A stretch of DNA of 63,839 nt, counting the filler, from Reticulomyxa filosa (lineage: Eukaryota > Protista > Foraminifera): the NCBI GenBank assembly GCA_000512085.1. It is 15 parts of 15 records of this genome, joined end to end, with 100 filler letters (N's around TTAATTAATTAA, not from the genome) between each part and the next. Parts side by side here need not be neighbours in the genome. Positions count along the whole stretch, not along the records: positions 33,930 to 48,459 come from ASPP01005526.1; 14 more parts are not named here. One strand, 5' to 3'. A program made the translations under genes and the position numbers. Below the pieces are notes generated by a model. The model made no database searches, was not told the origin of the DNA, and was given only the letters and a program-made list of their open reading frames with translations. Below are positions 33,930 through 48,459 of this stretch, piece after piece (the stretch's first letter is position 1; every line of letters starts with the position of its first letter).

Positions 33930-35572
33930 CTTTTTTTTTTTTTTTTTTTTTTTTTAACATGACAGTAGCGTAAGCCCCTTTCCCAACACCTTGCCAGTGG
34001 GTTCATAAAAATCCCACAGCCAAAACGATTCATGCTGGACAGTAGCACAATACTTTTTTGGTTGGTGATGAGGTTGTTTTGCGAGATGGTTGTGACTGTT
34101 GTGTTTGGGTTTGTCTGACTGATGAAGGGAGTTGCGCTTGCGACAATGTCCTCCAGATGTGGCTGTCACAGGCATAAGCATGCGAGAGGGATGCATATGT
34201 GCACAGTTCACACTGGCCACCGAAAGGTGTGCATTGTGGTCATGATCATTCGAATCTGGTTTGCTTTCGGCCACACGTTCCTTTGCTTGCACATTGGCAC
34301 TTCGAATTTGACCGCGTTTGGTCTGCGTCGCTCCACTGTGCTCTTCGTTTACGCTATTTTGGAGAATCACTATCTTACACCGCACATATACACACAAGAC
34401 GTACATACTCCATTTGCGATTATTCAAAAAAAAAAAAAAGAATAAGTAAATAAAAATAAAATAAATAAATAAAATTACCATCTGCCGAAAAAGTGGTTCG
34501 TAAAGTAGTATTGGTTGGTGTGGATGCCATGGAGTAGGAGATATCATCTCTATGTTCCATGTTGACACTATGATCGGTGGACTTGCAAGTTCCGTGCATG
34601 AGTGAGTCTTGTGAGACGTTGGAAGGTGTACAAGCTTCAACGAGCACTCGACACTCGTCAGTCTCTGGTGTTATTATGGCAGCTGTGACAAGTATCACTC
34701 TCTTGTCCTTTTTCTTTGTCTTCGTTCCTTTTGCATTGTTACATCTTTCGTTTGTTACTTCCTTGACTGTTTGCTTCAAATGATCGGTCTTGTTATCAAC
34801 ACAGTCATTCTGTCCCGCCACCAACAACTTTGGCTCCTTCTCCAATTCACTTTTCAATGTGACCGTTTGCTGGCACGTTCCCCTTGTATTGTTTTTTTAA
34901 AAAAAGAAAATTCGCTCACTTCCCTCCCTTGCTCTCAACATTAAAAAAAAAACAATATACGTATAGATCCGTACGTAATTCTTTGATGTATGCTAAAATA
35001 AATAAAAAATGAACACAAACTTATTGTCTGCTTGAAAGTTGCATTGTACTGATGCACTTGCTTCGTTCAATGTACCTGTCATTACATTAAGAACCAAAAA
35101 AATTATGTCCTTTTTTTTTTTTTGGCATTGAAATCTTTACAACAATTTTTTTTAAAAAGTAGACCAGGACTCAACTTGCTGTACGTACACGACTAATTTG
35201 CTTTTATTCATACACACAATAATTTTTTTTGTTTTTTTTCTCTAGTTTTGTTTTGTTGGGACTTACTTGCATTTTAGAAAATTCCATGGCACAGTTGGTA
35301 TCATTGGTCGCTTCATGGTTCGAAGAGCCGCCCAGGTACACATTTGCTGTATCCATGGTACTCGGAATAATCTTTTGGCTGTTCTTACTCGTCACTGCAC
35401 ATGGCAATGGGGAGCATTTCAAGGTGCTATCCATTTTGTCACTCGTCTTGTTCTGAACGTATACACTCGTGCTTGTAGTGGCATTTCGGGTAATGTGAGC
35501 GCTGGTTTGGTGTACGTTGGGTTGCCTGATACATGATTGTTGCAACATTTGTCCTTGCTGAACACATGCCAT
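33930..35572 (-). CDS. Probable protein kinase: long low-complexity N-terminus, kinase domain cut off by the contig end
   Basis: Multi-exon from MACVQQG (35572). The last visible exon ends WDFYEPTGKVLGKG, the start of subdomain I glycine loop. Confidence 0.5.
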
Positions 35573-37023
35573 TTATCACAAAGTGAAAAGTGATATTTTC
35601 ATAACAAATAAAAAAAAAACGATTTTGTTCAAAAACTTTTCTTCAACTACAAACGGGACAAAAAAAAAATATTTTTCTGTCAAACACTTTTTTCTTTTCA
35701 TATGAAAGGGAAACAAACATTTTTGGAAGAAATAGCTTTTTCGATGTGATCACGATTCTTCGAGTTTACTTTATCTTGGGCAAACACCTGAGAGTCACTG
35801 TCTTGAGGAGATGTTTTTTGCAACGTGTTGAGGAAAAATTTTTGTTTTAATTTGGAGAACATCTTAATACAGGAGGATGTTAAATTCTTTGTTAAAGGTC
35901 AATTTATGACAAGTGAATAACAGATTTGAAAAGGGAAAACAACTCTTCCCCAATAACAAGCGCACTGTCGTCCAAACACGCAAAATAAATGTATAACAAG
36001 ACATTAATTAACTGCAATCAGAATTTGTGAGTTCTATTATTTTGATTTGTCGTGTGTTTGGGAACACCTTATTTCACGGAAGATTAAAGCTTAAAATGAA
36101 GCAAATTTGGCAGTACGAAAAGCATGTAAAGCTGTCAAAGCTGATACAATCAAGAAAGTACAAAAGAGAGCTATGGATCAAGTTCTGCAAAAAAAGACTC
36201 AATTTTAACTTATGTTTGAAGAGAAAATTGCTTTTTTTAAATAAATCATTTACTACAAAAATTTATCCAGCCAACAATCTTTAGTTTGGAAAAAAGTACA
36301 AATCATGGTAAGAGTGTTTTTTTTAAACAGTATATTGCTAAACTGATTTGTAGTTTCAACTAATGAGGTTATAATATCAGTCGGAGTTTTGCATGTTAAA
36401 GAGATATTTGATAAATTCTTTTTGAATTACTTATACCAAAATCTGTATCACTAAAAGTGCGAAGGTTCATGGATTAAAACTGCTTACTTTTGTACTGCGA
36501 TTAGAACTTACCAAAAATATGGTGGTAGTGCGCTTTTTTAGTAGTGGTGCACTTTTCGTGGTTGCAAATGTATTAGAGCAAAATTTACGTTCTAAATAAC
36601 CACGTGTACATATATTGCAATAATATTTTCGTTCAACAAAGGAAAATACAGAACAATACTTCCAGATATACTGCCAATATTGGAGTGAGCCATGAAAAAC
36701 AGAATATTTTGTAGAAGAGCCTGAATTTAACACAAAAAATGTTTACAAATCAGAATAAATTGCCAATCATGTGAAATGCACAGTGCAGAATAAGCCAATA
36801 TTGTTATGCAGCATACATAGAAATAAGCAAACAAAGTTTAACACTACCTATCGAAAAACAATATGAAAATGTCAACGATTTATTCATGTTAGATGAATTC
36901 TAAAAAGAACTCTAATTAGCAACATCGTAATTGGAGTAAATTGAAACGCAAACCATCCAGCATGGTTAGACCAGAAAACAAACTATATTGGATAAAGTAT
37001 ATTTGATTTTATTGTTTCAACTA

Positions 37024-38095
37024 CAGTAGATTGAAAAAAAAACTGCAATAACTAAATGGCATTATGTGAAGAGAATCGATTTTCTCAATGAAAAATAAAG
37101 ATTTAAACCTAATTTTTTTTTTAAAACATCTACTAATCTTGTATTTTTTAAATATGAAATTGGTTTTATAATAAGTTTTTTCTAGGTTGATCAAAAATAT
37201 GATTTTTTCAAATGATTTTTAAAAATTTCGAATGAGTTCATATAAATTGAACTGTATTTTAAATAAGAAATTTTTAAATCTTTTTATTTTCATTTTTGGA
37301 ATCTTCAAGTCAAGTAGATACTTTTTTAAAAAATTAGACTTATATCTTTCTTAATTTTTAATAAAATTTTGAAATTTTTTTAAAAAATATTTTTTTGTAA
37401 TATTTTTACCATTTTATTAGTTTCATTTTGCATTGATTAAAGATTCAATTCTAATTGGTATTGACTCAACGATAGCTCGATATAGTTGAGTCCAGCGTTT
37501 ATATAAATTTGTAAATTTTAACATTACTTTGATATGACTAAATTTAAATCTGGCTTTTTCTTCTTAGTTATTACTATCAAACCATTTCTCTTTACAGTTC
37601 ATAAGAAAATTTGATTTCACAATCGTCATCTAACTCTTTCTTGATGTCTTTTAAGTTTTGCACTTTCCAGAAACAATCTATATCACAATTTTACGCTGAA
37701 CTAACAAAGAAATCTTCTATGACATGCTAGATCCAGCTTTTCTTTTTATGGTTCCATTACACTTATATGACGCCAGCCAAAATCGAAGCGAAGCTATACT
37801 TACATTAAATTTCTTTGCGACATATCGAATGCTATATCCACCAACCATCATACTAACAGCAACTCCTTTCTTAAAAGCAATCAAATGTTTCATTTTAAAT
37901 ATCAGAATTTTGAAATGTCAATTAAAAATATCAACAATAAAAAAATTAGTAGAAAAAAATTTAATATTTAAAAAATACAATATTAGTATATATATTTTTT
38001 AAAAAATTATGTTTAAATCTTTATTTTTCATGGAGAAAATCGATTATCTTCATATAATACCATTTATATATGTCAGTTTTTTTTGCAATCTAATG
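37024..38095 (-). mobile_element. Internally deleted Tc1-like DNA transposon with ~165-bp imperfect TIRs and TA flanks
   Basis: Left end TA|CAGTAGATTG...AATCGATTTTCTC.ATGAAAAATAAAGATTTAAAC mirrors right end ...CAATCTAATG|TA. Internal decayed transposase N-terminus (YSIRYVAKKFNVS..., ...KKKPDL...LKFTNLYKRWT). Confidence 0.85.
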
Positions 38096-39131
38096 TAGAA
38101 GCAAAATCTTTACGATAAAAAAAGAATTGGTGTGACAATAGTTGTTTTGTCCTTTATGTGCTGTTTTTTTATGATTTTTTTTTATGGTTAGTTCAGTTTT
38201 TTTATCTTTAAGATTTTTGACTGCAATTTTAAATTTGATTTTCGAAATAGTTTCATTGCATTGGCTAAGAAGAAAAGGCTAACTTGATATTGGCGAGCCT
38301 CGAATTTATAAACATGTACTAGCACCTGATCGCATATGATAAAAAGGTTAATTAATTCAAGTATTACACAATTTTCATTAATTCCGCTTGCATTGCTCAA
38401 AGGGTGTCATTTGAGACTCTGATATTTGAATCAATCTTAATAATTATTTATTATTAATTTTAAAACAATTCATTCTACTCCAAAAAAAAAGGTTTTTCAC
38501 AAAATTACTGGATCTATTGTTCCTTTTATCCCTTTAATTTTCCATTTTGTATTTGCCAGTTGCTTATCATTTTTGTGCATCAATCAAATAAAAGCAAGAA
38601 TGGTTGATTTATTTCTTCTAAACAAAAAAATAGAGTCAATCCAAAAAAAAAATAGACAAATAATTCAAATAAAATATAAAAAGACAAGTACTTTGAAATT
38701 CAAGCTTGACTACACACTTTTGTGTTATGCCGTTTTTGACTTGGCTATAGCAAATTTTTCTTGGTTAGTTGTTTTTTTTTGCTTTAGAGTTTTCTGGCAC
38801 ATTTTTAAAAAATTAAACAATTTGTTTTCTTCCTCAAATAACGCTTATCGTCAAAAAAAAGACGTTTTCAAGATTTTTGAACTCACTCGAAATTAAGATA
38901 CCGTACATGATATAACGACAGACAAATGTGAACACAAACAAATTTAAGATAAATCCTAGACATTATTAAACCACACAACCGTTACTGTCGATGTTTGAGA
39001 ACAGTTCTTCCGAACTAAAAAAAAGGGTATTCCACGAGCACGGAAACGTAGCGCTGCTTGTTTTTTTTTCTGTTTTGTACTGGAGGAATTGACTCTCCAT
39101 TCTGCACATTCTTAACCAAATAAAAGCAGAA

Positions 39132-42100
39132 ATGGTTTGTCTTTTTAGTTGGAAAAAAAAAATTTGGAGTGAATCCAAAAAAATCATACCTAACAAAACA
39201 CAAAGAACAAGTACCTTGTGATTGAATCCTATGGAGAAGAAAAAGCAATATTTAAGCCAACTGGGCTACGCAATGATGGAAGAATGCTAGACAACTCCAA
39301 AGAAAGCAACTGGGAAGAGTTGTTGAATACAATCAAAGAGAAGTTCCATCTGACAACCAAATCCTCACTTCTTTTAGTAAAAAAAGATAACATTGATGAT
39401 CACGTCGACAATGATGATGACCTATTTGATCTTTGGAATGCACTTATTAAAGATAAAAAGGAAACATCCTATACATTTAAAATGGTGTGTATGATTTCTC
39501 TTTTTAAAAAAACAAATAAATAGAAACAATACAGTATTAATAAACTAAAAAAAAAAAAAAAATAGAGATGTTTGGAAATAACAAAAGAAGGCAAGAAAAT
39601 AGAGTGGTGTCCAAAAGGATCGACTGACCCACAGTTTTATGGTGCAATGGAACAGCAAGACTGGACACAACATTTTGAAGATTTAAAACAATTAATTGGA
39701 GGACTGTCAGACAGTGAATATTTAGAGAATGAAAGTCAAAATAATAAAATAGAGACTGCAGATGACTTGAAACGTATTTGGGCTGATCGATATGACGAAA
39801 ATGACAGCAATAAATGGTCTTTGAAACTTCAAGTCAATTCAAATTATCTGACGGAAAGTGTAACGGAGCCAGGAGTTGAGGGAGATACAACTGTACAAAT
39901 TCATGGGGAAAAAGGGGAAGAGAAGGAACAAGATAATGAGGATTACAAGGTAGCAGATAGCAATACAGTCAATCTTAAAAATAACAGCAACAACATAAAA
40001 AAAAGTGACAAAATAGAGGAGAAGAAAGGAGATAAAACATCCAATGAAGGCAAATCAAAAGAAATACAACAACTACAAGAACTCAACGACGAAGAAGACG
40101 AAAAAAAAGAGATAATAAACAAACCAATTCAAAAAAAGGAGCATTTTGACATAAAATTGATGTTAGAGTTTGTGAAAAAGGCAGAAGAAGCAGCAGACAC
40201 AATTAAAGATCAAAATGTGATATTGATGTTAGGAGGCACTGGAACTGGAAAATCAACATTAATTCATTTTCTGGCCGGATCAACCATGGAAGATCAAATT
40301 GTAGATGGAAAGCCCCATATAGCCCCAGTGAAAGTTAAAAATAAAGCATTGGCTAATGTTCGTGCAAGTGCAGATGCAGCATCCCAGACACGATATATTA
40401 CAGCTGTTCCCATCAATTTAAAGGAGATGAATCTGCTTGTAGACATAGATAGTGTTGTCCTTTGTGACACTCCTGGATTTGAAGACACAAGTGGTCCTGA
40501 AGTCGATGTTGCAAATGGCCTTGGGATCATTCGAGCATTACAAAATTGTAAAAGTGTCAAACCTGTGGTGTTGATTAGTTACACTGCCTTGGGCAATCGA
40601 ATGAGTTGTGTCAAGGAATTGGCCCGTACACTCGTGTCCATTATTCAGTCCATCGAAAATCATCTCACTTCATTCTCGTATGTATTTACCAAACTACCCG
40701 ACGATAAAAAAAAATTTATGCACTCATTGGTGAGGGATACTTGGCAAAACGTGAAAGACGAGCCAGATGAAGGATTCAAAGCCATTTTAAAGGACATTGC
40801 CAAGAAAACACAAAATGGTGTGATCGCACCAAATTTAGTGAATGATTCACCAAATCCTTTGATAGAGAATCTTACCGATATAAAGGATTTCATTAAGAAT
40901 CCTGGAGAGGTCTTTCAACCTTTTGTTTCCGAAAGTTCCAAAGGAGCAGTCCAAATGCAAGTGCAGAAACACAAAGAACATATTTGGCAGGCCTATCAAA
41001 ATGAAGATTATAATGTTGCTAAAACAAAGTTGGATGAAATCATAGACCTGAATAATGTATTGAAACTTCCAACAATTGAAAATGAATACAAGGATATTGT
41101 GAAAAAGTTGACCAATGAATGGAACAAAAAAAGTGAAAATGCCAAATCGATGTTCAACGAACGTATTGCATCTCCGCATCTAAGCAAAAATGATGTATTG
41201 GCTTATCAGAAAGTCGTAAATGAATTTGTTTCTGCAAAGGAATTACGCAATAATTTGAAAGATGCAATTTGTGGCGAGTCTTTAATTCAAAATATCAATG
41301 AACAAATGCAACATTTGATTAATGCAATTGAAGAGGAAAAGGAAGGGGACGAAAGCATATTACAAGCTCATTTGGATAAAATTGCACAAGTGCAAGCCTG
41401 TTTCCCTGATTTTAGTGGTTCTTACAATGAAGCTTGTCAAAAACTGAAAAAGAGAGCTGTAAAGTATGCGGATGAAGCAAGAGAATGTATTAAAAAGAAT
41501 AAATTTATGGAGTTTCGAAAAGAGTTAGAGAAGATTGGAAAGATTTTGATTCTTCAAGAACATCTTCGTTCTCTCATAGATATTAAAAAAGAGATCAAAG
41601 ATTTGGAAAATGAATTATTAGCTCATCTCAATAACGTTTCAGGTGAAGGATATGATGTGTTGAAAAAGGCAATAAAAGAGGAAAGCGCTCCACCAAAAGA
41701 GGAAAAACATGAAAAAGAAAAAGTTGAAATAGCGAATATTCGAATTGAAAGACTTGACAAAACTGCTGTCGATATCTTGAAAAGAGCATTTCCTCTCTTG
41801 GAGGAAGCAGCAAATGCATTTGACTTGCCTTATGAACATGTTGGACTTGACAAGTCGACAAAAGAGTTGGTTCGTTCGTTTGTAAATCAAATGATTGGAT
41901 ATTTTGAAAAAGTTAGACAAAAGATTGCATACCTTTTTGAAAAGCAAAGATATCAAGCATTTGATGAAATTAAAAAATTTATTTTGGTGATGGACGAGCT
42001 TCGAACCATAGAAGCCGTAAAACAAAGAACAGGAAGTCAATATTTTCAAACTATCGAAAAGATATTTGGTTTTGTGCGCGATGTCCAAAAAGACATTGAC

Positions 42101-45100
42101 ACAATACTCAATTCTCTCAATAAGCCAAGCGTATCTTTTGATTATAATCGATTGTACGAATGTGTCTTGTGTATAAATCAGTCGGAGTGGATTGACGAAC
42201 GTCAGGAAGATGGCAGCAGCAATTTGAAGGAAACCGTAAAACAAAAGTTGACATTACATTTACATGAATTACAACAATTGAGTGAAGAATTAGAACTCGA
42301 TTTGGACCATCCTGAACTTCTCAAAGAAGCTCGTAATATCTTCACCCATCTTGGAAATTTGCGTCGTTTGGAAGTGATCATTCCAAAATTAGCTCCTTTT
42401 CGTCAAAAGGTGAGTATCCTATTGGAGCAATCGGTGCGAGCCACATTGGCTACAATTCGTCGTGAATTTGCATTGAACACAAATGTGTCAAATTATGAAA
42501 AAACGAGAGAGGAATTGATCCGACTCAAACCATGTGCAGAGAGTATTCAAAATGCCAATTCATACCTGCAGAAAAAGAAGTTTGAGAATGTGAAAGATCT
42601 TGACTCCAAAATTAATGCAACCAAAGAAAAATTAACCAACATCGAAGTTAAGATTAAATCAAAATATCAACCGATTGCAAATAAGATACAACCAACTGAG
42701 GAAAAAATTTCACAATTGGAAAGTATTAAACAAGAGTATGGAAAAATGACTTCCAAGCCAATGCATAAAGATGCAATGAGATATTTGAATGCAAGAGGAT
42801 ATAAATCAATACAAGCTGTGGAGGAGGATATTCGAAAAGGACAACAAAATTTGGAAAATTTATCAGAAGAAGGAGCGATAGTCAAAAAAAGCTTTCAAGA
42901 ACAAGTGAAGGAATTAAAAGAAAAACTGGACAAGGACGAACAAGTAAAGAAGGGATACGAAGCACTATTACAAAAGGGAATGGCATCATTGCAAAGCATT
43001 ACTGAATCATTAAAGGACCATGGCTTTTTGGAAAGTGAGGTGCAAAGATTAATTAACAATGAAAAAGAGTTGAACGATAAAATTCGTCAATGCGAACGTG
43101 AAATTGCAAAATTAAAAAATTCTGGACACACTTTTGAAGTGTTGAATGCTGCCAGAACTGTAAAGGTGTTGCAATATTTGAAAGAGTGTAAAACCACTGC
43201 CTTCCCTGTTGAAACAACAACAGCAACAGATCAATCTGATAAAAATGGCAATGAAAGTAGCAACAATGAGACGAAAGAGGATGAAAAAAAACAAACAGAG
43301 AATAGATCAGTAATCCCTCTGAGACAAGAAACCACAAACACATTGGATTTGGTGGAAGAATTTTTACGAAAGTATTCCATCTTTGTTCAAAGTCAACTCA
43401 ATTCTTTGAACTTTACCGAAAGTGAAGCAACATCTAACAATGATGATGAAAAAGACGATGACAGCATAGGCATGATTGAAAAAGTCGAAAGTATTTTCAA
43501 CCGATTTACTGAAGTAAAAAAATTGCAAAAAGATTATCCCATAATATTTGCATACTTTCCGCAAGATATAATTGAACTATTTGACAAACGATTAAAAAAA
43601 ATGTATTTGGATCTACATGATGAAATGATGAAATTAGCAGCCCTGGAAAGCACTAAACCATTGAAAAGAAAAATCGCAATTGCCAGAGCATTGAGTGTAT
43701 TAGATGACTTTGCTCAATCCAATTATAAATTTCGTGAGCTGTTTTTAGATTATCAAACCAAAATCTACAAAGATGTAATTGATATCAAGCAGGTATTGGA
43801 GGCAATTGAAAAGCATGAATATCCAACTGTTGCCTCTGAATTGATTCGTATTCTACAAAATATTGAAGATCCAAATGTGAAAAGAGCATTCGGTAATATT
43901 AAAATCTCTTTATCGCGCTCTTTAAATACTTTGGCCAAAAGTACGCTGAAGAAAGTGTTACTGCTTGGGGAAGACGAAGTGGATTTGAAAAAAGTGACAG
44001 AATTGGTAGATGACTTAGGATATATCAAAGATGCACAACACTTGGTAATCCAATTTGTGGATGAGGTAGCACAAAAAGAAATTGAAAAAACAGCAAACAA
44101 AACGAAATTTGCCATTGGAAGATGGATGAAAGTGGTATTGGATACATTCGATGCATCTGTGAATGCTTTGAATTTTTTGGAAGCGGAAAACAAAATTATG
44201 CTGGTTCAAAGGATTGTTGATATTTTAGGAGATTATTGTGAACCTGCACCTTTAGACAGTGAAAAAGATGTGAAGAAAGGACAAGAGGGTAATGGAAACG
44301 AAAGAACAGAAACGATCACGAGTCGCGTAGGAAAACTAAGGAAAAGAATTGAAAACAAATTACAGGAAATTGTGGATAAATACACAGGCATCGACCTGAC
44401 TGGACACACGTTTAATCCTTATGCTTCATCTCCACCCAGAGAAATTTACGAAAAACTTTACACAATAATGAACAAGGGCGCTTTATACAAAGATAAATGG
44501 AAGGAAATTGAAAATAACATTATTCTAAAAATTCGAAAGCAATTGATCGAAGCTCGTGAGAAAGTGGGTACTTTACGTACTTGGGAAATTGATTCTTATA
44601 TTCGACTTTGTAGGACAGTATTAACAGTTTTACCTGACCACATGAGAAATATGCTTGAGGAAGAGATCAACCAAGGTGAAAAAGATATATCACATGAAAC
44701 AGAAATTGCTGCAGGAGCAGTAGCCAAAATAGTTGACAACAAAAATATAAACGATATTAATCAATTTTTAAATAAGTGCACAGACAATCAAAAAAAGATG
44801 GTCGAAACAAAAGTTGCCACAATGGCTCGAGACATGACTGCAGGCATAGAGCAGAAATGGGCCAACGAAGATATGATGGGGGCATTGGAAAATTTAAAAG
44901 AATTGTATAGCTTGAAAACGTCAATAAAAATGGCAATACCCGATCTCGACAATTGTCTCAAAGCTGCAAAAGTCACACTCACCAATCAGGTCGAAAAGGC
45001 ACAACAAAAAGCAGTGGCCAGTTTTGATGCATTTAAGCGTTGTGAGGTTGGAGCCAATACCATGGAGCCAATTGAAAAAGCACTGGACTTGGTCATTGAA

Positions 45101-48100
45101 TGCATGAACTTGAAAGGTGAAAGTGACGAATTAATACCATCTAATTTTGAAGAAAAATTAATGAATTAGACAGAAACACTTCCGACTGTTTTGCATCATT
45201 GCGACAAAAATATAGTACCAATTTTGAGCAAAAAAATGTGTATGACTTACAAAAAGTATTGGACTGCATGAAAGAAGTTGGCGATAAGACCCCCTTTTTG
45301 CAAAAGATAATGTCGTTTAGACAAAAAAAGGGATATTGGGATAGTCCTGAAAATAAAACGACCTCTGATCTGTGGACGTATTCGGAAGCGAAACTTGTTC
45401 TCAATAATAATTTGGAAAAGATGGTACGAGAGACAACCGATAAAGGACTCTTCAACGAAACCACCATTAAAGGAAGCGATACGGAACGAGATAAGTTTTT
45501 CCAAGACATGAAAGATAAACTCGAATTTATGCAGAAAATGTCTCAATGCAAAACTCATGTCACAAGCGTTGATAAACTAGAGGAGTGCTCAAAACAATTG
45601 AAAAAGGATATACAAGATATTGCTAAGAAAATGGAAAAAAATTCCAACTGGTCCTCCTCGGATTGTAGCTATCTTAGCCAGTGTTACAGGTGTTTTCTTG
45701 CCATGAAAAAACATGCCGTATTTCCAGATCTTGCGAAATCCCAAGTTGAAATTATTAACTCCATTGTGAAGACACGAGTTACGCAATTGGAAAAAGAGGC
45801 AATGGATAACTTGTATCCAAATATCCTAATACCTCGCTTAGTGGAAATGAAAACCATATCCGTGCATCTTTTCAAATTTAAACATTCCATTAACAAACTT
45901 ATTGATACACTAGTAATTGCCTACAAAAAAAAGAGCAATGGGGGTGTCGATATTGCAGCATTAGCAACACAACTCGAAGAAGAATCAACCGGAGTGGGTA
46001 AGATGATTGTTGCTGAGCATAGTGTGTTCAAAGGATTCTCTGTTGCGCTATTCAATCAGAAAACCCTGGCACATGGAATTGACTATGTTTTGGAAAAGAT
46101 TGAAGCAAAAGGTGATCCAATAGATACATCGAAATTAAAGAAAATGTATGATGAATTTAATACAAAATATCGCAAACTTGTGCAAGATAATCTGGCCAAA
46201 ATCAAAAATGACTCGAAGCAACTCAGTGTATTTGCAAATAATGCAAGAATGTGTGCTCGTGGCATCAAACAAATACAAGACAATGAAAAATGGGACGCAA
46301 GTGTTCGAGACAGCATCCCTGAAATGATGGCTAACATTTTTGCGTTGTGGACACTCCAACATGTACAATACTATCATGATGCACAAGGAGTGGAAGGTCA
46401 AAATGATTATTTGGTACAACCACATCCAGCTCAAGTGATTTCCATATTCCGCATGTTGGGTGTTGAAGAGAAAAAAACTGGATTGACAAATCACTTAATT
46501 CAAATCGGAACAGGAGAAGGAAAATCAGTTACTTTGGCAGTCACTTGTTGTATGTTGGCATTATTTGGATTTGATGTGAGCTGTGCTTCATACAGTGAAT
46601 ACTTGAGCAATAGAGATTTCAAAAGTTTTGAGCAATTGTTCAATATCTTGGGCGTAATTGATCATATTCATTATGGCACATTCAACAAGATTTGTGAAAG
46701 GATTATCAATGAAGGAGGTGATGTGCGCAAACTTGTGGAAAACTTAATCCTTCCAGATAATGAAAAAAAATCTAATGAACTTGAGCGAATCATTCGTTCA
46801 AAGATACTTTTGATTGATGAAGTTGATGTATTTTTCAACAAAGACTTTTACGGAAGCTGCTATTCACCTGCAGCTACATTGAGGCATGATGCCATCACCA
46901 AACTTATTGACTTCATTTGGAAGAATAAAAACTCATTTTTGAAATTGAAGGATGTAAAACAATCCAATGAATACAAGGCATGTTGTAATGTATTGAAAGA
47001 ATGGGATTCTTTGTTGGATGAAGCGATTAAAGATATGTTGAGCGATGTTCAAAACTTTTTATCTCATGGATATCAAGTGAGTAATGATAAAATTGGGTAC
47101 AAAGAACAAGACAGTATTTCTTACAATATTCGATATGGTTACAAGACTTTATTTGCGTATTATCATGAAAATGCACAAAATAAAATAAGTGCTGAAAGTT
47201 TAAAAAACAATATATTCCTTTCATTTCAAATTGGAAATTTTTCTTATGCCAATGTTCCCAAAAGTTTCTATCGTATTATGGGTGTGAGTGGGACATTGAA
47301 AACGTTGAGTAAATCTGAACAAGAAGTGGTAGAGCAAGATTATCATGTTTCCAAACATACTTACATGCCATCTTTATTTGGTGACAATTTTCTTGTCTTT
47401 GCACAACAAAAGGATGTTTCTATTGTTCGTGAAAGCAATTATTTCATTATGCTTAAAGAGGAGATTGATACACGTCTTGTTGGAAAAATTCAAGAAACAA
47501 AGCGAGCTGTGCTGGTGTTCTTTGAAACCAAAAAACAACTAATGGAGTTGTATGAATCGTCCAATTTTTCTCCAATTAAAGATGATGCAATTGTAATGAC
47601 TGAAGAAATATCTCCCGACGCCAAAGAATCTTTCATTAAGCGTGCCACTAGTTCTGGTCAAGTGGGATTATTCACCAAAGCATTTGGAAGAGGGACGGAT
47701 TTTTACTGTCGTGATCAAATTGTGGCCGCCAATGGTGGACCACATGTGATCCAAACTTTCCTTTCTGAAGAGTTGTCTGAGGAAGTGCAAATCAAGGGAC
47801 GTACAGCAAGACAAGGAAAACCTGGTTCTTACAGTTTGATGTTGTGTGACAAATCACTTGAGAAATTCTCGATTACACAACAAGATATTGAAAATGCGCG
47901 TAATTTAGGCAACTTTTATTCAATGCTCGATGCAAAACGAAATGAATTCTTCAAAGCTCAATACGCTGAGAACAAAAAATTTGTGGAATATGCCTCAAAA
48001 GAGCACGAATTGGGTGAGAAATTAATTACAGCTGTAAAAAAAAATGATGTAAATACAGTGAAGAAAATGTTATGTGAACGGAACAGAGGAACGGAAGAGA

Positions 48101-48459
48101 AAAAATCTTCACGTACAATAGTGCTTATGGATGCAACTGGTTCGATGGGCCATTTGTTACAAAAAGCTAAAAATACAGTGAGCATAATGTTTGAACGTAT
48201 TTCAACTATTTTAAAAGAAAATGGAAGATCTCCAAACAGCTTCGAAATGCAATTTGTTGTGTATCGAAATTACAATGCTCCTGAAGATATGATTTTGCAG
48301 TGCTCCACTTGGGAATCCAAACCTGAAAATCTTCGCAATTTTATGGAATGTATTGAGGCTGACTATGGATGGGGAAATGAAGCTATTGAAATTGGATTGG
48401 CCCATGTCAATAGAGAAAATAAGAAAGAAGCTGTTTCACAGATCATTTTGATTGGGGAC
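39132..48459 (+). CDS. Giant (>3,000 aa) protein: 2x PB1-like, TRAFAC/AIG1-like GTPase, helical/coiled-coil stalk, SecA-type SF2 ATPase, vWA; 3'-truncated; one frameshift at ~45155
   Basis: ATG 39132-39134, introns 39135-39205 and 39485-39565, then ORFs 39572-45169 and 45199-48459. GTPase G1 GGTGTGKS (40232), G3 DTPG (40466), G4-like FTK (40685). SecA motifs QIGTGEGKS (46501), YLSNRD, IDEVD (46813), GVSGT, GRGTDF (47686), QIKGRTARQGKPG (47788). vWA MIDAS DATGSM (48130). Confidence 0.9.

What the first reader, a model, noticed from the sequence alone, without database searches (positions are those of the whole stretch)
39132..48459. Giant GTPase + SecA-type ATPase + vWA fusion: candidate protist immunity/conflict machine
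Seen: one gene of >3,000 codons carrying, in order, two small PB1-like domains, a P-loop GTPase (GGTGTGKS / DTPG / FTK), well over 1,500 aa of helical and coiled-coil sequence, a full set of SecA-type SF2 motifs (GTGEGKS, YLSNRD, DEVD, GVSGT, GRGTD, QxxGRxxRQGxPG) and a vWA domain with MIDAS (DATGSM). Known: SecA is normally a ~900-aa bacterial/plastid translocase motor; AIG1/GIMAP, GBP, VLIG and IRG-type GTPases act in cell-autonomous defence; vWA domains often serve as substrate adaptors for NTPase motors. Inference: this is a cytosolic (no evident signal or transit peptide) two-NTPase machine in which the GTPase and stalk assemble on a membrane or target, vWA captures substrate, and the SecA-like motor threads or extracts proteins. 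I know of no functional characterisation of this architecture, although related uncharacterised SecA-like giants may exist in other eukaryotes.
Basis: partly seen in the sequence, partly recalled or inferred. Interest (0 to 1): 0.9.

Follow-up and report, generated by a model that had tools for sequence, protein, structure and literature searches.

The report
Giant GTPase–SecA-like–vWA gene family member
This foraminifer gene really does encode a protein of over 3,000 amino acids that joins a GIMAP-like GTPase, a long helical stalk, a SecA-type ATPase motor and a vWA domain. It belongs to a large, widespread and uncharacterised family shared by protists, rotifers, Hydra and obligate intracellular bacteria, so it is a good lead, but its function is still only inferred.

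Summary
The piece is a whole 14,530-nt contig of Reticulomyxa filosa.

The gene is not one clean ORF:
- It has an 81-nt GT-AG intron (39485-39565).
- A one-base-short A-run (45153-45157) splits it into two frames. GenBank therefore ends RFI_06773 there.
- The contig end removes about the last 120 residues of the vWA domain.

Paralogues read straight through the break at protein and DNA level.

Fold prediction supports three of the domain calls:
- a TRAFAC GTPase, closest to GIMAP but nearly tied with other TRAFAC GTPases;
- a SecA-like motor (Z 29.8 to SecA, against about 22 for DEAD-box helicases);
- the start of a vWA fold.

The PB1 call is weak.

The ATPase lies outside true SecA/SecA2 (100% support) and has no Pfam match to SecA's wing/scaffold or preprotein-binding domains.

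The family has about 990 clusters at E<1e-30. R. filosa has at least 11 paralogues. Other members occur in rotifers, Hydra, Tetrahymena, Arcella, and in Legionellales, Coxiellaceae, Chlamydiae and Rickettsiales. N-termini vary (U-box, C2, ankyrin, jacalin+GBP).

The literature mentions it only in passing, as "eukaryotic-like SecA". An immune or host-microbe role is plausible but untested.

The parts
39218..39484 (+). First beta-grasp / PB1-like module (exon). The true start codon upstream is unresolved. The annotated ATG at 39132 is joined by a doubtful mini-intron that removes residues conserved in paralogues.
   Evidence: Pfam PB1 E 0.0011, 19.3 bits, below the cut-off. Conserved in R. filosa paralogues. 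Sequence read.
39485..39565 (+). 81-nt GT...AG phase-0 intron containing in-frame stop codons.
   Evidence: Sequence. The GenBank model P0001 skips 27 codons here. Flanking residues (KM | RCLEITKE) are conserved in all paralogues.
39566..39850 (+). Second beta-grasp / PB1-like module.
   Evidence: AF2 model residues 1-92, pLDDT 74-93, topology beta-beta-alpha-beta-beta-alpha-beta. Conserved in paralogues.
39851..40138 (+). Lys/Glu/Asn-rich linker, predicted disordered.
   Evidence: pLDDT below 50 for model residues 93-189. Sequence printed.
40139..41131 (+). TRAFAC-class GTPase domain with helical extension. G1 GGTGTGKS 40232-40255, switch-I SQTRYIT 40382-40402, G3 DTPG 40466-40477, G4-like FTK 40685-40693.
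   Evidence: AF2 pLDDT around 90. Foldseek top hit GIMAP7, E 5.7e-7. VIA: GIMAP4 Z 13.0, GIMAP7 Z 12.8, then HflX, EngB and Era at Z about 12. Motif residues are invariant in 50 homologues.
41132..46290 (+). About 1,700-residue helical middle region ('stalk') with no recognisable domain. It contains the frame break.
   Evidence: No Pfam hit above threshold. Collinear with paralogues. It is the most divergent part between paralogues: 56% amino-acid identity, dS about 0.85.
45153..45157 (+). A5 homopolymer one base shorter than in the paralogue (A6). This shifts the frame and creates the stop at 45167-45169, where GenBank ends RFI_06773.
   Evidence: Three-frame translation compared with paralogues P0002, P0004 and P0007. 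DNA alignment to L023. L023 has an uninterrupted ORF across the equivalent point.
46291..47913 (+). SecA-like DEAD motor (NBD1, an insert at the PPXD position, NBD2). Motifs I, Ia, II (DEVD), III, V and VI are intact.
   Evidence: Pfam SecA_DEAD and Helicase_C above cut-off. The only PDB sequence hits are SecA. AF2 pLDDT 88. The top 36 Foldseek hits are SecA/SecA2. VIA Z 29.8 with 520 residues aligned, against about 22 with 320 aligned for DEAD-box helicases.
47914..48108 (+). Long single helix plus a short helix after NBD2, in the position of SecA's scaffold helix. It leads straight into the vWA domain, and Pfam finds no SecA wing/scaffold (SecA_SW) match.
   Evidence: Model helices 539-580 and 584-594. 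No SecA_SW hit in Pfam.
48109..48459 (+). N-terminal half of a vWA domain with MIDAS residues (D-A-T-G-S 48130-48144; GNE 48373-48381; final D of ILIGD at 48457-48459). Cut off by the contig end.
   Evidence: Alternating beta-strand and helix elements in the model, residues 604-720. 9 of 16 full-length homologue C-termini hit VWA_4, 7 hit VWA_2 and 5 hit VWA. Homologues extend about 120 residues further.

Best explanation
Shown:
- This is one nuclear gene of the foraminifer Reticulomyxa filosa. The public annotation splits it because the assembly is one A short in a homopolymer, and the contig end truncates it.
- It encodes a soluble protein of at least 3,050 residues. In order it carries two small beta-grasp (PB1-like) modules, a disordered linker, a TRAFAC GTPase closest in fold to GIMAP/AIG1, about 1,700 residues of helical stalk, a SecA-type DEAD motor with intact catalytic motifs, and a vWA/MIDAS domain.
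- It is a member of a large, previously uncharacterised family of roughly 3,000-residue proteins with this same core.
- The family is expanded lineage by lineage in R. filosa, rotifers, Hydra and Tetrahymena.
- The family is also present as stand-alone genes in obligate intracellular bacteria: Legionellales, Coxiellaceae, Chlamydiae, and, as a GTPase-less form, Wolbachia and other Rickettsiales.

Inferred:
- The protein is a cytosolic, nucleotide-gated remodelling machine.
- GTP binding by the G domain, helped by the N-terminal beta-grasp modules, would control self-assembly or recruitment.
- The MIDAS site of the vWA domain would hold an acidic residue of a target protein.
- The SecA-like clamp would use ATP to pull on or unfold that polypeptide.
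- Three observations point to the interface between eukaryotic cells and intracellular microbes: the variable N-terminal heads, the paralogue expansions, and the repeated exchange with intracellular bacteria. Eukaryotic copies would serve cell-autonomous defence or surveillance, and bacterial copies would act as effectors or mimics.
For: Gene structure.

Domains.

Family size: 4,064 cluster representatives at E<1e-3 and 990 at E<1e-30, many of them 2,900-3,600 residues long.

Named eukaryotes, several on chromosome-scale contigs, with signs of tandem copies (near-consecutive Tetrahymena locus tags on one contig; RFI_03864 and RFI_03866 on one R. filosa contig).

Bacterial distribution: 17 of the 18 GTDB loci are labelled as intracellular lineages or as unclassified Gammaproteobacteria or Pseudomonadota. 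The exception is one Actinomycetota MAG.

Bacterial context: the gene sits in true bacterial chromosomal surroundings with housekeeping neighbours and no conserved partner gene.

The GTPase and SecA-like modules co-occur in almost all clades.

Variable N-termini: U-box in 3 of 51, plus C2 and ankyrin. One member carries a jacalin lectin plus a bona fide GBP GTPase in place of the family GTPase. A deep clade carries a DnaJ J-domain.

dN/dS is 0.38 overall.

Literature: the phage WO eukaryotic association module lists a 'SecA' domain closer to invertebrates than to bacteria (PMC5062602). L. fallonii lfa2470 [SecA DEAD-like] is listed among eukaryote-derived genes (PMC4256840).
Against: - There are no expression, localisation or biochemical data for any family member.
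- No sequencing run could be listed, so a single transcript and the true A-run length are unverified.
- The closeness to GIMAP is marginal: Z 13.0 against 11.9-12.1 for HflX, EngB and Era. There is no AIG1 Pfam hit.
- The G4 motif is T-K-x-P rather than N/T-K-x-D, so guanine specificity is not assured.
- Paralogue expansion and domain shuffling are compatible with immunity but do not prove it.
- A J-domain in one clade fits general protein quality control equally well.
- The G-domain homodimer prediction gave no verdict.
Confidence: 0.45

Rival explanations
1. The family has a general cell-biological role rather than a defence role, for example protein quality control or disaggregation, or organelle, membrane or cytoskeleton remodelling in large or syncytial cells. 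The SecA-like motor and vWA domain would act on endogenous clients.
For: A deep clade carries a DnaJ J-domain between the GTPase and the SecA-like motor. The SecA-like plus vWA core is strongly conserved, at 47-56% identity between foraminifer, rotifer, ciliate and gammaproteobacterium. dN/dS of 0.3-0.4 still indicates purifying selection. Other motor-plus-MIDAS machines, such as midasin, are housekeeping (my own knowledge).
Against: The named members come from only a handful of eukaryotic lineages. Copy number is lineage-specific. N-termini are variable and include a lectin plus GBP and a U-box. Intracellular bacteria and their mobile elements have acquired the gene repeatedly. These features are unusual for core housekeeping genes.
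Confidence: 0.3
2. This particular copy is a decaying pseudogene of the family. The frameshift at 45153-45157 would be real, and no ATG precedes the conserved N-terminus in frame.
For: The assembly as deposited has A5 where the paralogue has A6. An in-frame stop at 39191 lies just upstream of the conserved N-terminal residues, with no ATG in frame.
Against: 1,087 codons downstream of the shift remain open. They are 81-84% identical to paralogues and all catalytic motifs are intact. dN/dS in the SecA-like part is 0.35. A one-base homopolymer miscount is a common assembly error.
Confidence: 0.15
3. The contig is bacterial (endosymbiont or contaminant) DNA, or a very recent non-functional transfer, rather than a working foraminiferal gene.
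For: Close relatives exist in Legionellales and unclassified Gammaproteobacteria, at 48-56% identity in the motor. Bacterial lineages are basal in the SecA-rooted tree.
Against: There is a GT-AG intron with in-frame stops. The contig has AT-rich flanks (25-31% GC) with no bacterial genes in 5 kb upstream. At least 11 divergent paralogues lie on separate R. filosa contigs and form a starred clade of their own.
Confidence: 0.04
4. The ATPase is a bona fide SecA translocase working with a SecY channel.
For: SecA is the only PDB family hit by sequence and is the top structural match.
Against: Identity is only 14-21% in the structural alignments and 23-25% in tblastn segments. The family is separated from SecA/SecA2 by a branch with 100% support. 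There is no Pfam SecA_SW, SecA_PP_bind or SEC-C hit. After the scaffold-like helix the chain continues into a vWA domain. The motor is embedded in a 3,000-residue soluble protein.
Confidence: 0.01

Closest known systems
SecA / SecA2 preprotein translocase ATPase (bacteria, plastids)
   Same: It shares the two-lobed DEAD motor with motifs I, Ia, II (DEVD), III, V and VI, an insert at the PPXD position, and a long helix after NBD2. VIA gives Z 29.8 over 520 aligned residues, and the top 36 Foldseek hits are SecA or SecA2. Atlas TM by query is about 0.6 over 500-537 residues.
   Different: Identity is 14-21% in the structural alignments. The protein forms a separate clade. Pfam detects no SecA_SW (wing/scaffold), SecA_PP_bind or SEC-C region. 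The motor is fused to a GTPase, a stalk and a vWA domain. The protein is soluble and encoded in a eukaryotic nucleus.
'Eukaryotic-like SecA' genes of Wolbachia prophage WO (wHa_3920/3930), Megaira and Rickettsia plasmid 'SecA-like domain proteins', and L. fallonii lfa2470 [SecA DEAD-like]
   Same: The Wolbachia and Megaira loci tested here carry the same SecA-like module: Wolbachia loci at 30-34% identity and a Megaira plasmid at about 31%. The literature notes the wHa and lfa2470 genes as eukaryote-like and of unknown function.
   Different: The Wolbachia versions tested here lack the family GTPase and the vWA domain, and they come as two adjacent genes. I did not test wHa_3920/3930 or lfa2470 themselves.
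GIMAP/AIG1 and other large defence GTPases (GBP, VLIG, IRG)
   Same: It shares the TRAFAC G-domain fold with GIMAP4/7 as the top structural matches, and a DTPG-type G3 motif. One family member carries a true GBP domain at the same position.
   Different: There is no AIG1 Pfam hit. The Z-score lead over Era, HflX and EngB is under 1. The G4 motif is atypical. The G domain is part of a 3,000-residue protein with a second motor.
Midasin/Rea1 and MoxR-vWA pairs (ATPase motor plus MIDAS domain)
   Same: The logic is the same: a motor joined by a long linker to a MIDAS domain that grips a ligand. In midasin the ligand is a ubiquitin-like domain (my own knowledge). Here, beta-grasp modules sit at the other end of the same protein.
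   Different: The motor here is SF2/SecA-like, not AAA+. There is no sequence relationship beyond P-loop matches. Any contact between the beta-grasp modules and the MIDAS site is pure speculation.

Membership tests
Bona fide SecA translocase | DEAD motor (NBD1/NBD2) with SecA-type motifs | tested here: met
   Pfam SecA_DEAD 38.3 bits, above the 24.6 cut-off. Motifs located. Structural Z 29.8.
Bona fide SecA translocase | Preprotein cross-linking domain (PPXD, Pfam SecA_PP_bind) | tested here: inconclusive
   No Pfam hit. There is an insert of about 150 residues at the right position, and about 170 more residues align to full SecA than to the motor alone, but only in high-rmsd alignments (6-7 A).
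Bona fide SecA translocase | Helical wing/scaffold C-domain (SecA_SW) and C-terminal SEC-C tail | tested here: not met
   No Pfam SecA_SW or SEC-C hit. The model shows one long helix and then the vWA domain.
Bona fide SecA translocase | Falls within the SecA/SecA2 clade | tested here: not met
   The family is separated from Alkaliphilus SecA and L. plantarum SecA2 by a 100% SH-aLRT branch about 1.8 substitutions per site long.
Bona fide SecA translocase | Works with a SecY channel | not testable with these tools
   No partner gene is visible. Bacterial homologues have housekeeping neighbours only.
Giant GTPase - SecA-like - vWA family (unnamed; UniProt 'SecA family profile domain-containing protein') | Collinear homology over GTPase, stalk, SecA-like motor and vWA | tested here: met
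   P0002 aligns over 2,840 residues at 69-74% identity. Distant members cover 80-90% of the 1,865-residue query. GTPase and motor profiles hit the same proteins.
GIMAP/AIG1 GTPases | TRAFAC G-domain fold with G1, G3 and G4 | tested here: met
   Fold matches. G1, G3 and F-T-K are invariant or nearly so in the family. G4 is T-K-x-P, not the canonical form.
GIMAP/AIG1 GTPases | Match to the AIG1 family profile, clearly closer than to other TRAFAC families | tested here: not met
   No AIG1 hit in Pfam; only weak MMR_HSR1 and RsgA hits. GIMAP Z 13.0 against 11.9-12.1 for HflX, EngB and Era.
PB1 domain | Match to the PB1 profile; beta-grasp fold with an acidic OPCA motif or a basic cluster | tested here: inconclusive
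   19.3 bits, below the 23.6 cut-off. 1 of 10 paralogues matches. No PDB profile hit. The predicted topology fits. An acidic D-rich stretch is present, but I did not test whether it is an OPCA motif.
vWA domain with MIDAS | vWA profile match and D-x-S-x-S ... T ... D metal site | tested here: met
   Homologue C-termini hit VWA_4, VWA_2 and VWA. D, T and S of D-x-T-x-S and the later D are invariant in the family (invariant or nearly so). The window's copy is cut after the strand ending in ILIGD.

The most novel reading that the evidence does not exclude
These giants are a new class of eukaryotic cell-autonomous defence machine. They would use a SecA-derived polypeptide motor, gated by an immunity-type GTPase and aimed by a vWA/MIDAS domain and swappable N-terminal heads, to extract or unfold proteins of intracellular bacteria or viruses. 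Legionellales, Chlamydiae, Coxiellaceae and Rickettsiales (including phage WO) would have repeatedly captured or donated copies, which they use as effectors or decoys against this pathway.
Probability: 0.3. Interest if true: 0.85.

Novelty: new variant of a known kind. Interest (0 to 1): 0.7.

Why it matters
SecA-type motors are known only as Sec translocase engines. Here the same motor is built into a conserved, soluble protein of about 3,000 residues, together with a GTPase and a MIDAS domain.

The family has about a thousand sequence clusters. It spans forams, ciliates, amoebae, rotifers and cnidarians, and also the main groups of obligate intracellular bacteria.

If it acts at the host-microbe interface, it would be a new arm of cell-autonomous immunity in early-branching animals and protists. 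It would also explain the 'eukaryotic-like SecA' genes of Wolbachia phage WO and of Legionella.

Tetrahymena and Hydra are genetically tractable, which makes the question testable.

Tried and rejected
- Sequencing runs for the locus: none was listed, so neither the frameshift nor the transcript structure could be checked, and read laying was not used.
- Complex prediction on two copies of the G domain gave no verdict. It is not evidence either way.
- The protein-atlas search on the helical middle region gave no usable hit.
- PDB profile searches gave nothing informative. The GTPase alignment produced only P-loop-level matches to midasin, ABCE1 and SRP54. The PB1-like alignment found nothing. 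The vWA alignment found nothing.
- Phage collection: no phage WO hit, only a weak vWA match.
- Upstream 5 kb: no Pfam domains, tRNAs or notable repeats.
- I considered an intron at the ORF2/ORF3 junction and rejected it. Paralogues are collinear through the site, and a single extra A restores their reading.
- ROCO-type 'AP-GTPase' conflict systems (PMC8195603) are a different GTPase family.
- Direction of transfer between bacteria and eukaryotes is not settled. The SecA-rooted tree puts bacteria basal, but those are long branches.
Full report
**What the piece is.** The range 33930-48459 is a complete 14,530-nt contig of the freshwater foraminifer Reticulomyxa filosa. The 1,975-residue GenBank protein RFI_06773 (P0001) matches it at 100% and comes from a contig of exactly this length. 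Coding GC is about 34-37% and the 5 kb upstream is 25-31% GC. That upstream stretch has no recognisable gene, tRNA or notable repeat.

**Checking the observation.** The + strand carries three long ORFs: 39218-39523, 39572-45169 (1,865 aa) and 45199 to the contig end (1,087 aa).

The first two ORFs are in the same frame. They are separated by an 81-nt GT...AG intron (39485-39565) that contains stop codons. The public model removes it, and the flanking residues are conserved in every paralogue.

The second junction is not an intron. Paralogues P0002, P0004 and P0007 read '...NFEEKIKE(M/L)D...SLQQKY' without a break. The window gives '...SNFEEK' in one frame and 'INELD...SLRQKY' in the next. At DNA level the paralogue has GAAGAAAAAATC where the window has GAAGAAAAATT, so the A-run at 45153-45157 is one base short. 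The paralogue's contig has an uninterrupted ORF across this point.

The 1,087 codons after the shift are open and 81-84% identical to paralogues, with all catalytic motifs intact. A homopolymer miscount is therefore more likely than decay, but no reads could be obtained to prove it.

Homologues continue about 115-130 residues past the last residue of the window, so the contig end cuts the vWA domain.

The 5' end is unresolved. The annotated ATG at 39132 is linked by a 26-nt mini-intron that deletes residues (VIESYGE) conserved in paralogues. In the conserved frame there is a stop at 39191 and no ATG.

**Domains.**
- *SecA-like motor, sequence evidence.* Pfam gives SecA_DEAD (38.3 bits) and Helicase_C (25.3 bits) above their cut-offs. 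By sequence the only PDB family hit is SecA.
- *SecA-like motor, structural evidence.* An AF2 model of the C-terminal 720 residues is confident (pLDDT 88, pTM 0.84). Its 36 best Foldseek matches are all SecA or SecA2 (E 5e-19 to 3e-10), and the next matches are DinG, UvrB and DEAD-box proteins at about 1e-8. VIA-align gives Z 29.8 with 520 residues aligned to SecA, against Z about 22 with about 320 aligned for eIF4A-type helicases. The ESM Atlas search agrees.
- *What is missing relative to SecA.* After NBD2 there is one 42-residue helix, then a short helix, then the first alternating beta-strand and helix elements of the vWA fold. Pfam finds no SecA_SW, SecA_PP_bind or SEC-C. The insert at the PPXD position may be PPXD-like, but I could not isolate it.
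- *vWA.* The call rests on full-length homologues: 9 of 16 hit VWA_4 (best E 8e-10), 7 hit VWA_2 and 5 hit VWA. The D-x-T-x-S and distal D residues are invariant in the vWA alignment and invariant or nearly so in the wider one.
- *N-terminal model.* Overall pLDDT is 80.6. It shows a beta-grasp-like module (residues 1-92), a disordered linker (93-189) and a G domain with helical extension.
- *GTPase.* Foldseek ranks GIMAP7, SMG9, GIMAP1/2, mitofusin, Toc34, GBP1 and atlastin. An exhaustive VIA search gives GIMAP4 Z 13.0 and GIMAP7 Z 12.8, followed closely by HflX, EngB and Era. It is therefore a TRAFAC GTPase fold, with GIMAP nearest only by a small margin.
- *PB1.* Sequence support is weak.
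- *Solubility.* No transmembrane segment is predicted.

**The family.**
- *Size.* An exhaustive search with the C-terminal ORF finds 4,064 cluster representatives at E<1e-3 and 990 at E<1e-30. Many are 2,900-3,600 residues long.
- *Named eukaryotes.* Members include R. filosa, bdelloid and monogonont rotifers, Hydra vulgaris, three Tetrahymena species and Arcella. R. filosa has 13 annotated entries and at least 11 distinct GTPase-bearing copies. The Hydra genes lie on chromosome-scale contigs. The Tetrahymena genes have near-consecutive locus tags on shared contigs, which suggests tandem arrays.
- *Bacteria.* A scan of one genome per GTDB species found 18 loci. Seventeen are in Legionellales, Coxiellaceae, Chlamydiae, Wolbachia or unclassified Gammaproteobacteria/Pseudomonadota, and one is in an Actinomycetota MAG. 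Plasmids of Megaira and Rickettsia endosymbionts carry related 'SecA-like domain proteins'.
- *Bacterial context.* The gene stands alone among housekeeping genes with no conserved partner.
- *Architecture across clades.* The GTPase and SecA-like modules co-occur in almost all clades. The Wolbachia-type branch lacks the GTPase and the vWA domain.
- *Variable N-termini.* The region before the GTPase ranges from about 80 to about 870 residues. It carries a U-box (3 of 51), C2, ankyrin, or nothing recognisable. One member has a jacalin lectin plus a genuine GBP GTPase in place of the family GTPase. A deep clade inserts a DnaJ J-domain.

**Phylogeny.**
- The family is cleanly separated from true SecA/SecA2 (100% support).
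- Rooted on SecA, the basal branches are bacterial (Megaira, Wolbachia, Legionellales, Chlamydiae) plus the DnaJ clade.
- All named eukaryotic sequences sit in a short-branched crown clade (95-99% support). This clade also holds a U-box gammaproteobacterial group next to bdelloid rotifers and a Legionellales sequence near Arcella.
- Each eukaryote forms its own expansion clade, and their order does not follow the species tree.
- This pattern indicates repeated horizontal transfer. The direction is uncertain because the basal bacterial branches are long. Published work read the Legionella and Wolbachia genes as acquired from eukaryotes.

**Evolutionary rate.** Against paralogue RFI_15929, dN/dS is 0.38 overall and 0.29-0.40 in the GTPase, stalk and motor. 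It is about 1 in the short N-terminal module and linker, but that rests on few changes. dS climbs from 0.04 at the 5' end to 0.86 in the distal stalk and falls back to 0.31 in the motor. This is a mosaic that suggests gene conversion among paralogues.

**Interpretation.**
- *Shown:* a real, conserved, multi-copy eukaryotic gene with the stated architecture; a SecA-derived motor that is not a translocase SecA; and a family shared with intracellular bacteria.
- *Inferred:* that it is a GTP-gated, ATP-driven protein-remodelling machine aimed by its vWA domain and N-terminal head, and that it acts in host-microbe conflict.

The conflict reading is favoured by four things: the expansions, the head-domain swapping (including lectin plus GBP and U-box), the moderately raised dN/dS, and the association with Legionellales, Chlamydiae, Rickettsiales and the phage WO eukaryotic association module. 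It has no direct support. A quality-control or cell-biological role is a serious rival.

**Literature.** Full-text searches found no description of this architecture. There are only passing mentions: a 'SecA' domain type in the phage WO eukaryotic association module with invertebrate-like homology (PMC5062602; PMC9203015), and L. fallonii lfa2470 [SecA DEAD-like] in a table of eukaryote-derived genes (PMC4256840). The AP-GTPase systems of PMC8195603 are ROCO-type and unrelated.

**Verdict.** This gene is one more member of a family that already sits in the databases, but the family itself is an uncharacterised new use of a SecA-type motor and deserves experimental follow-up.

Noticed in passing
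window 39566-48100 compared with L023 3277-11871: Synonymous divergence between this gene and paralogue RFI_15929 is strongly mosaic. dS is 0.04 in the second PB1-like module, 0.18 in the GTPase, 0.85 in the distal stalk and 0.31 in the motor. This suggests gene conversion or recombination among paralogues.
   Followed up: partly
window 39132-39241: The public model RFI_06773 starts at ATG 39132 and uses a mini-intron of about 26 nt (39211-39236) that deletes residues (VIESYGE) conserved in paralogues. In the conserved frame there is a stop at 39191 and no ATG, so the real start, possibly a tiny 5' exon, is unresolved.
   Followed up: partly
L022 1-10799 (Candidatus Megaera polyxenophila plasmid CP113870.1): Two adjacent giant 'SecA-like domain protein' genes lie on a Rickettsiales plasmid from a Euplotes symbiont. 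One is about 15.7 kb and the other 4.8 kb. Wolbachia locus L016 likewise has two adjacent SecA_DEAD genes.
   Followed up: partly
P0236 (metagenomic, 2,649 aa): This family member has an N-terminal jacalin-like lectin and a bona fide GBP GTPase domain (56.5 bits) where the family GTPase normally sits.
   Followed up: yes
P0049, P0050, P0053, P0054 (metagenomic, about 2,600-3,100 aa): A deep clade has an RsgA-like GTPase, a DnaJ J-domain in the middle, the SecA-like motor and, in P0049 and P0050, a clear vWA domain (44 bits in P0049). This hints at Hsp70 recruitment.
   Followed up: partly
ESM Atlas search with model mfdf33cb6d6d2 (row 7): A cluster of 543 'SecA P-loop/SecA DEAD-like' proteins is 87% eukaryotic, most commonly chordate. 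It matches the model as well as true SecA does (TM 0.61 over 528 residues). SecA-like motors may therefore also exist in chordates.
   Followed up: no
PMC5037449, table of differentially expressed transcripts: A Daphnia similoides transcript annotated 'SecA DEAD-like domain' is listed among the most significant differences between sexual and parthenogenetic females. I did not check whether it belongs to this family.
   Followed up: no
window 33930-39130: The 5.2 kb upstream has no recognisable gene (25-42% GC) and begins with a T25 run at the contig start. The ORFs on the - strand have no Pfam match.
   Followed up: yes
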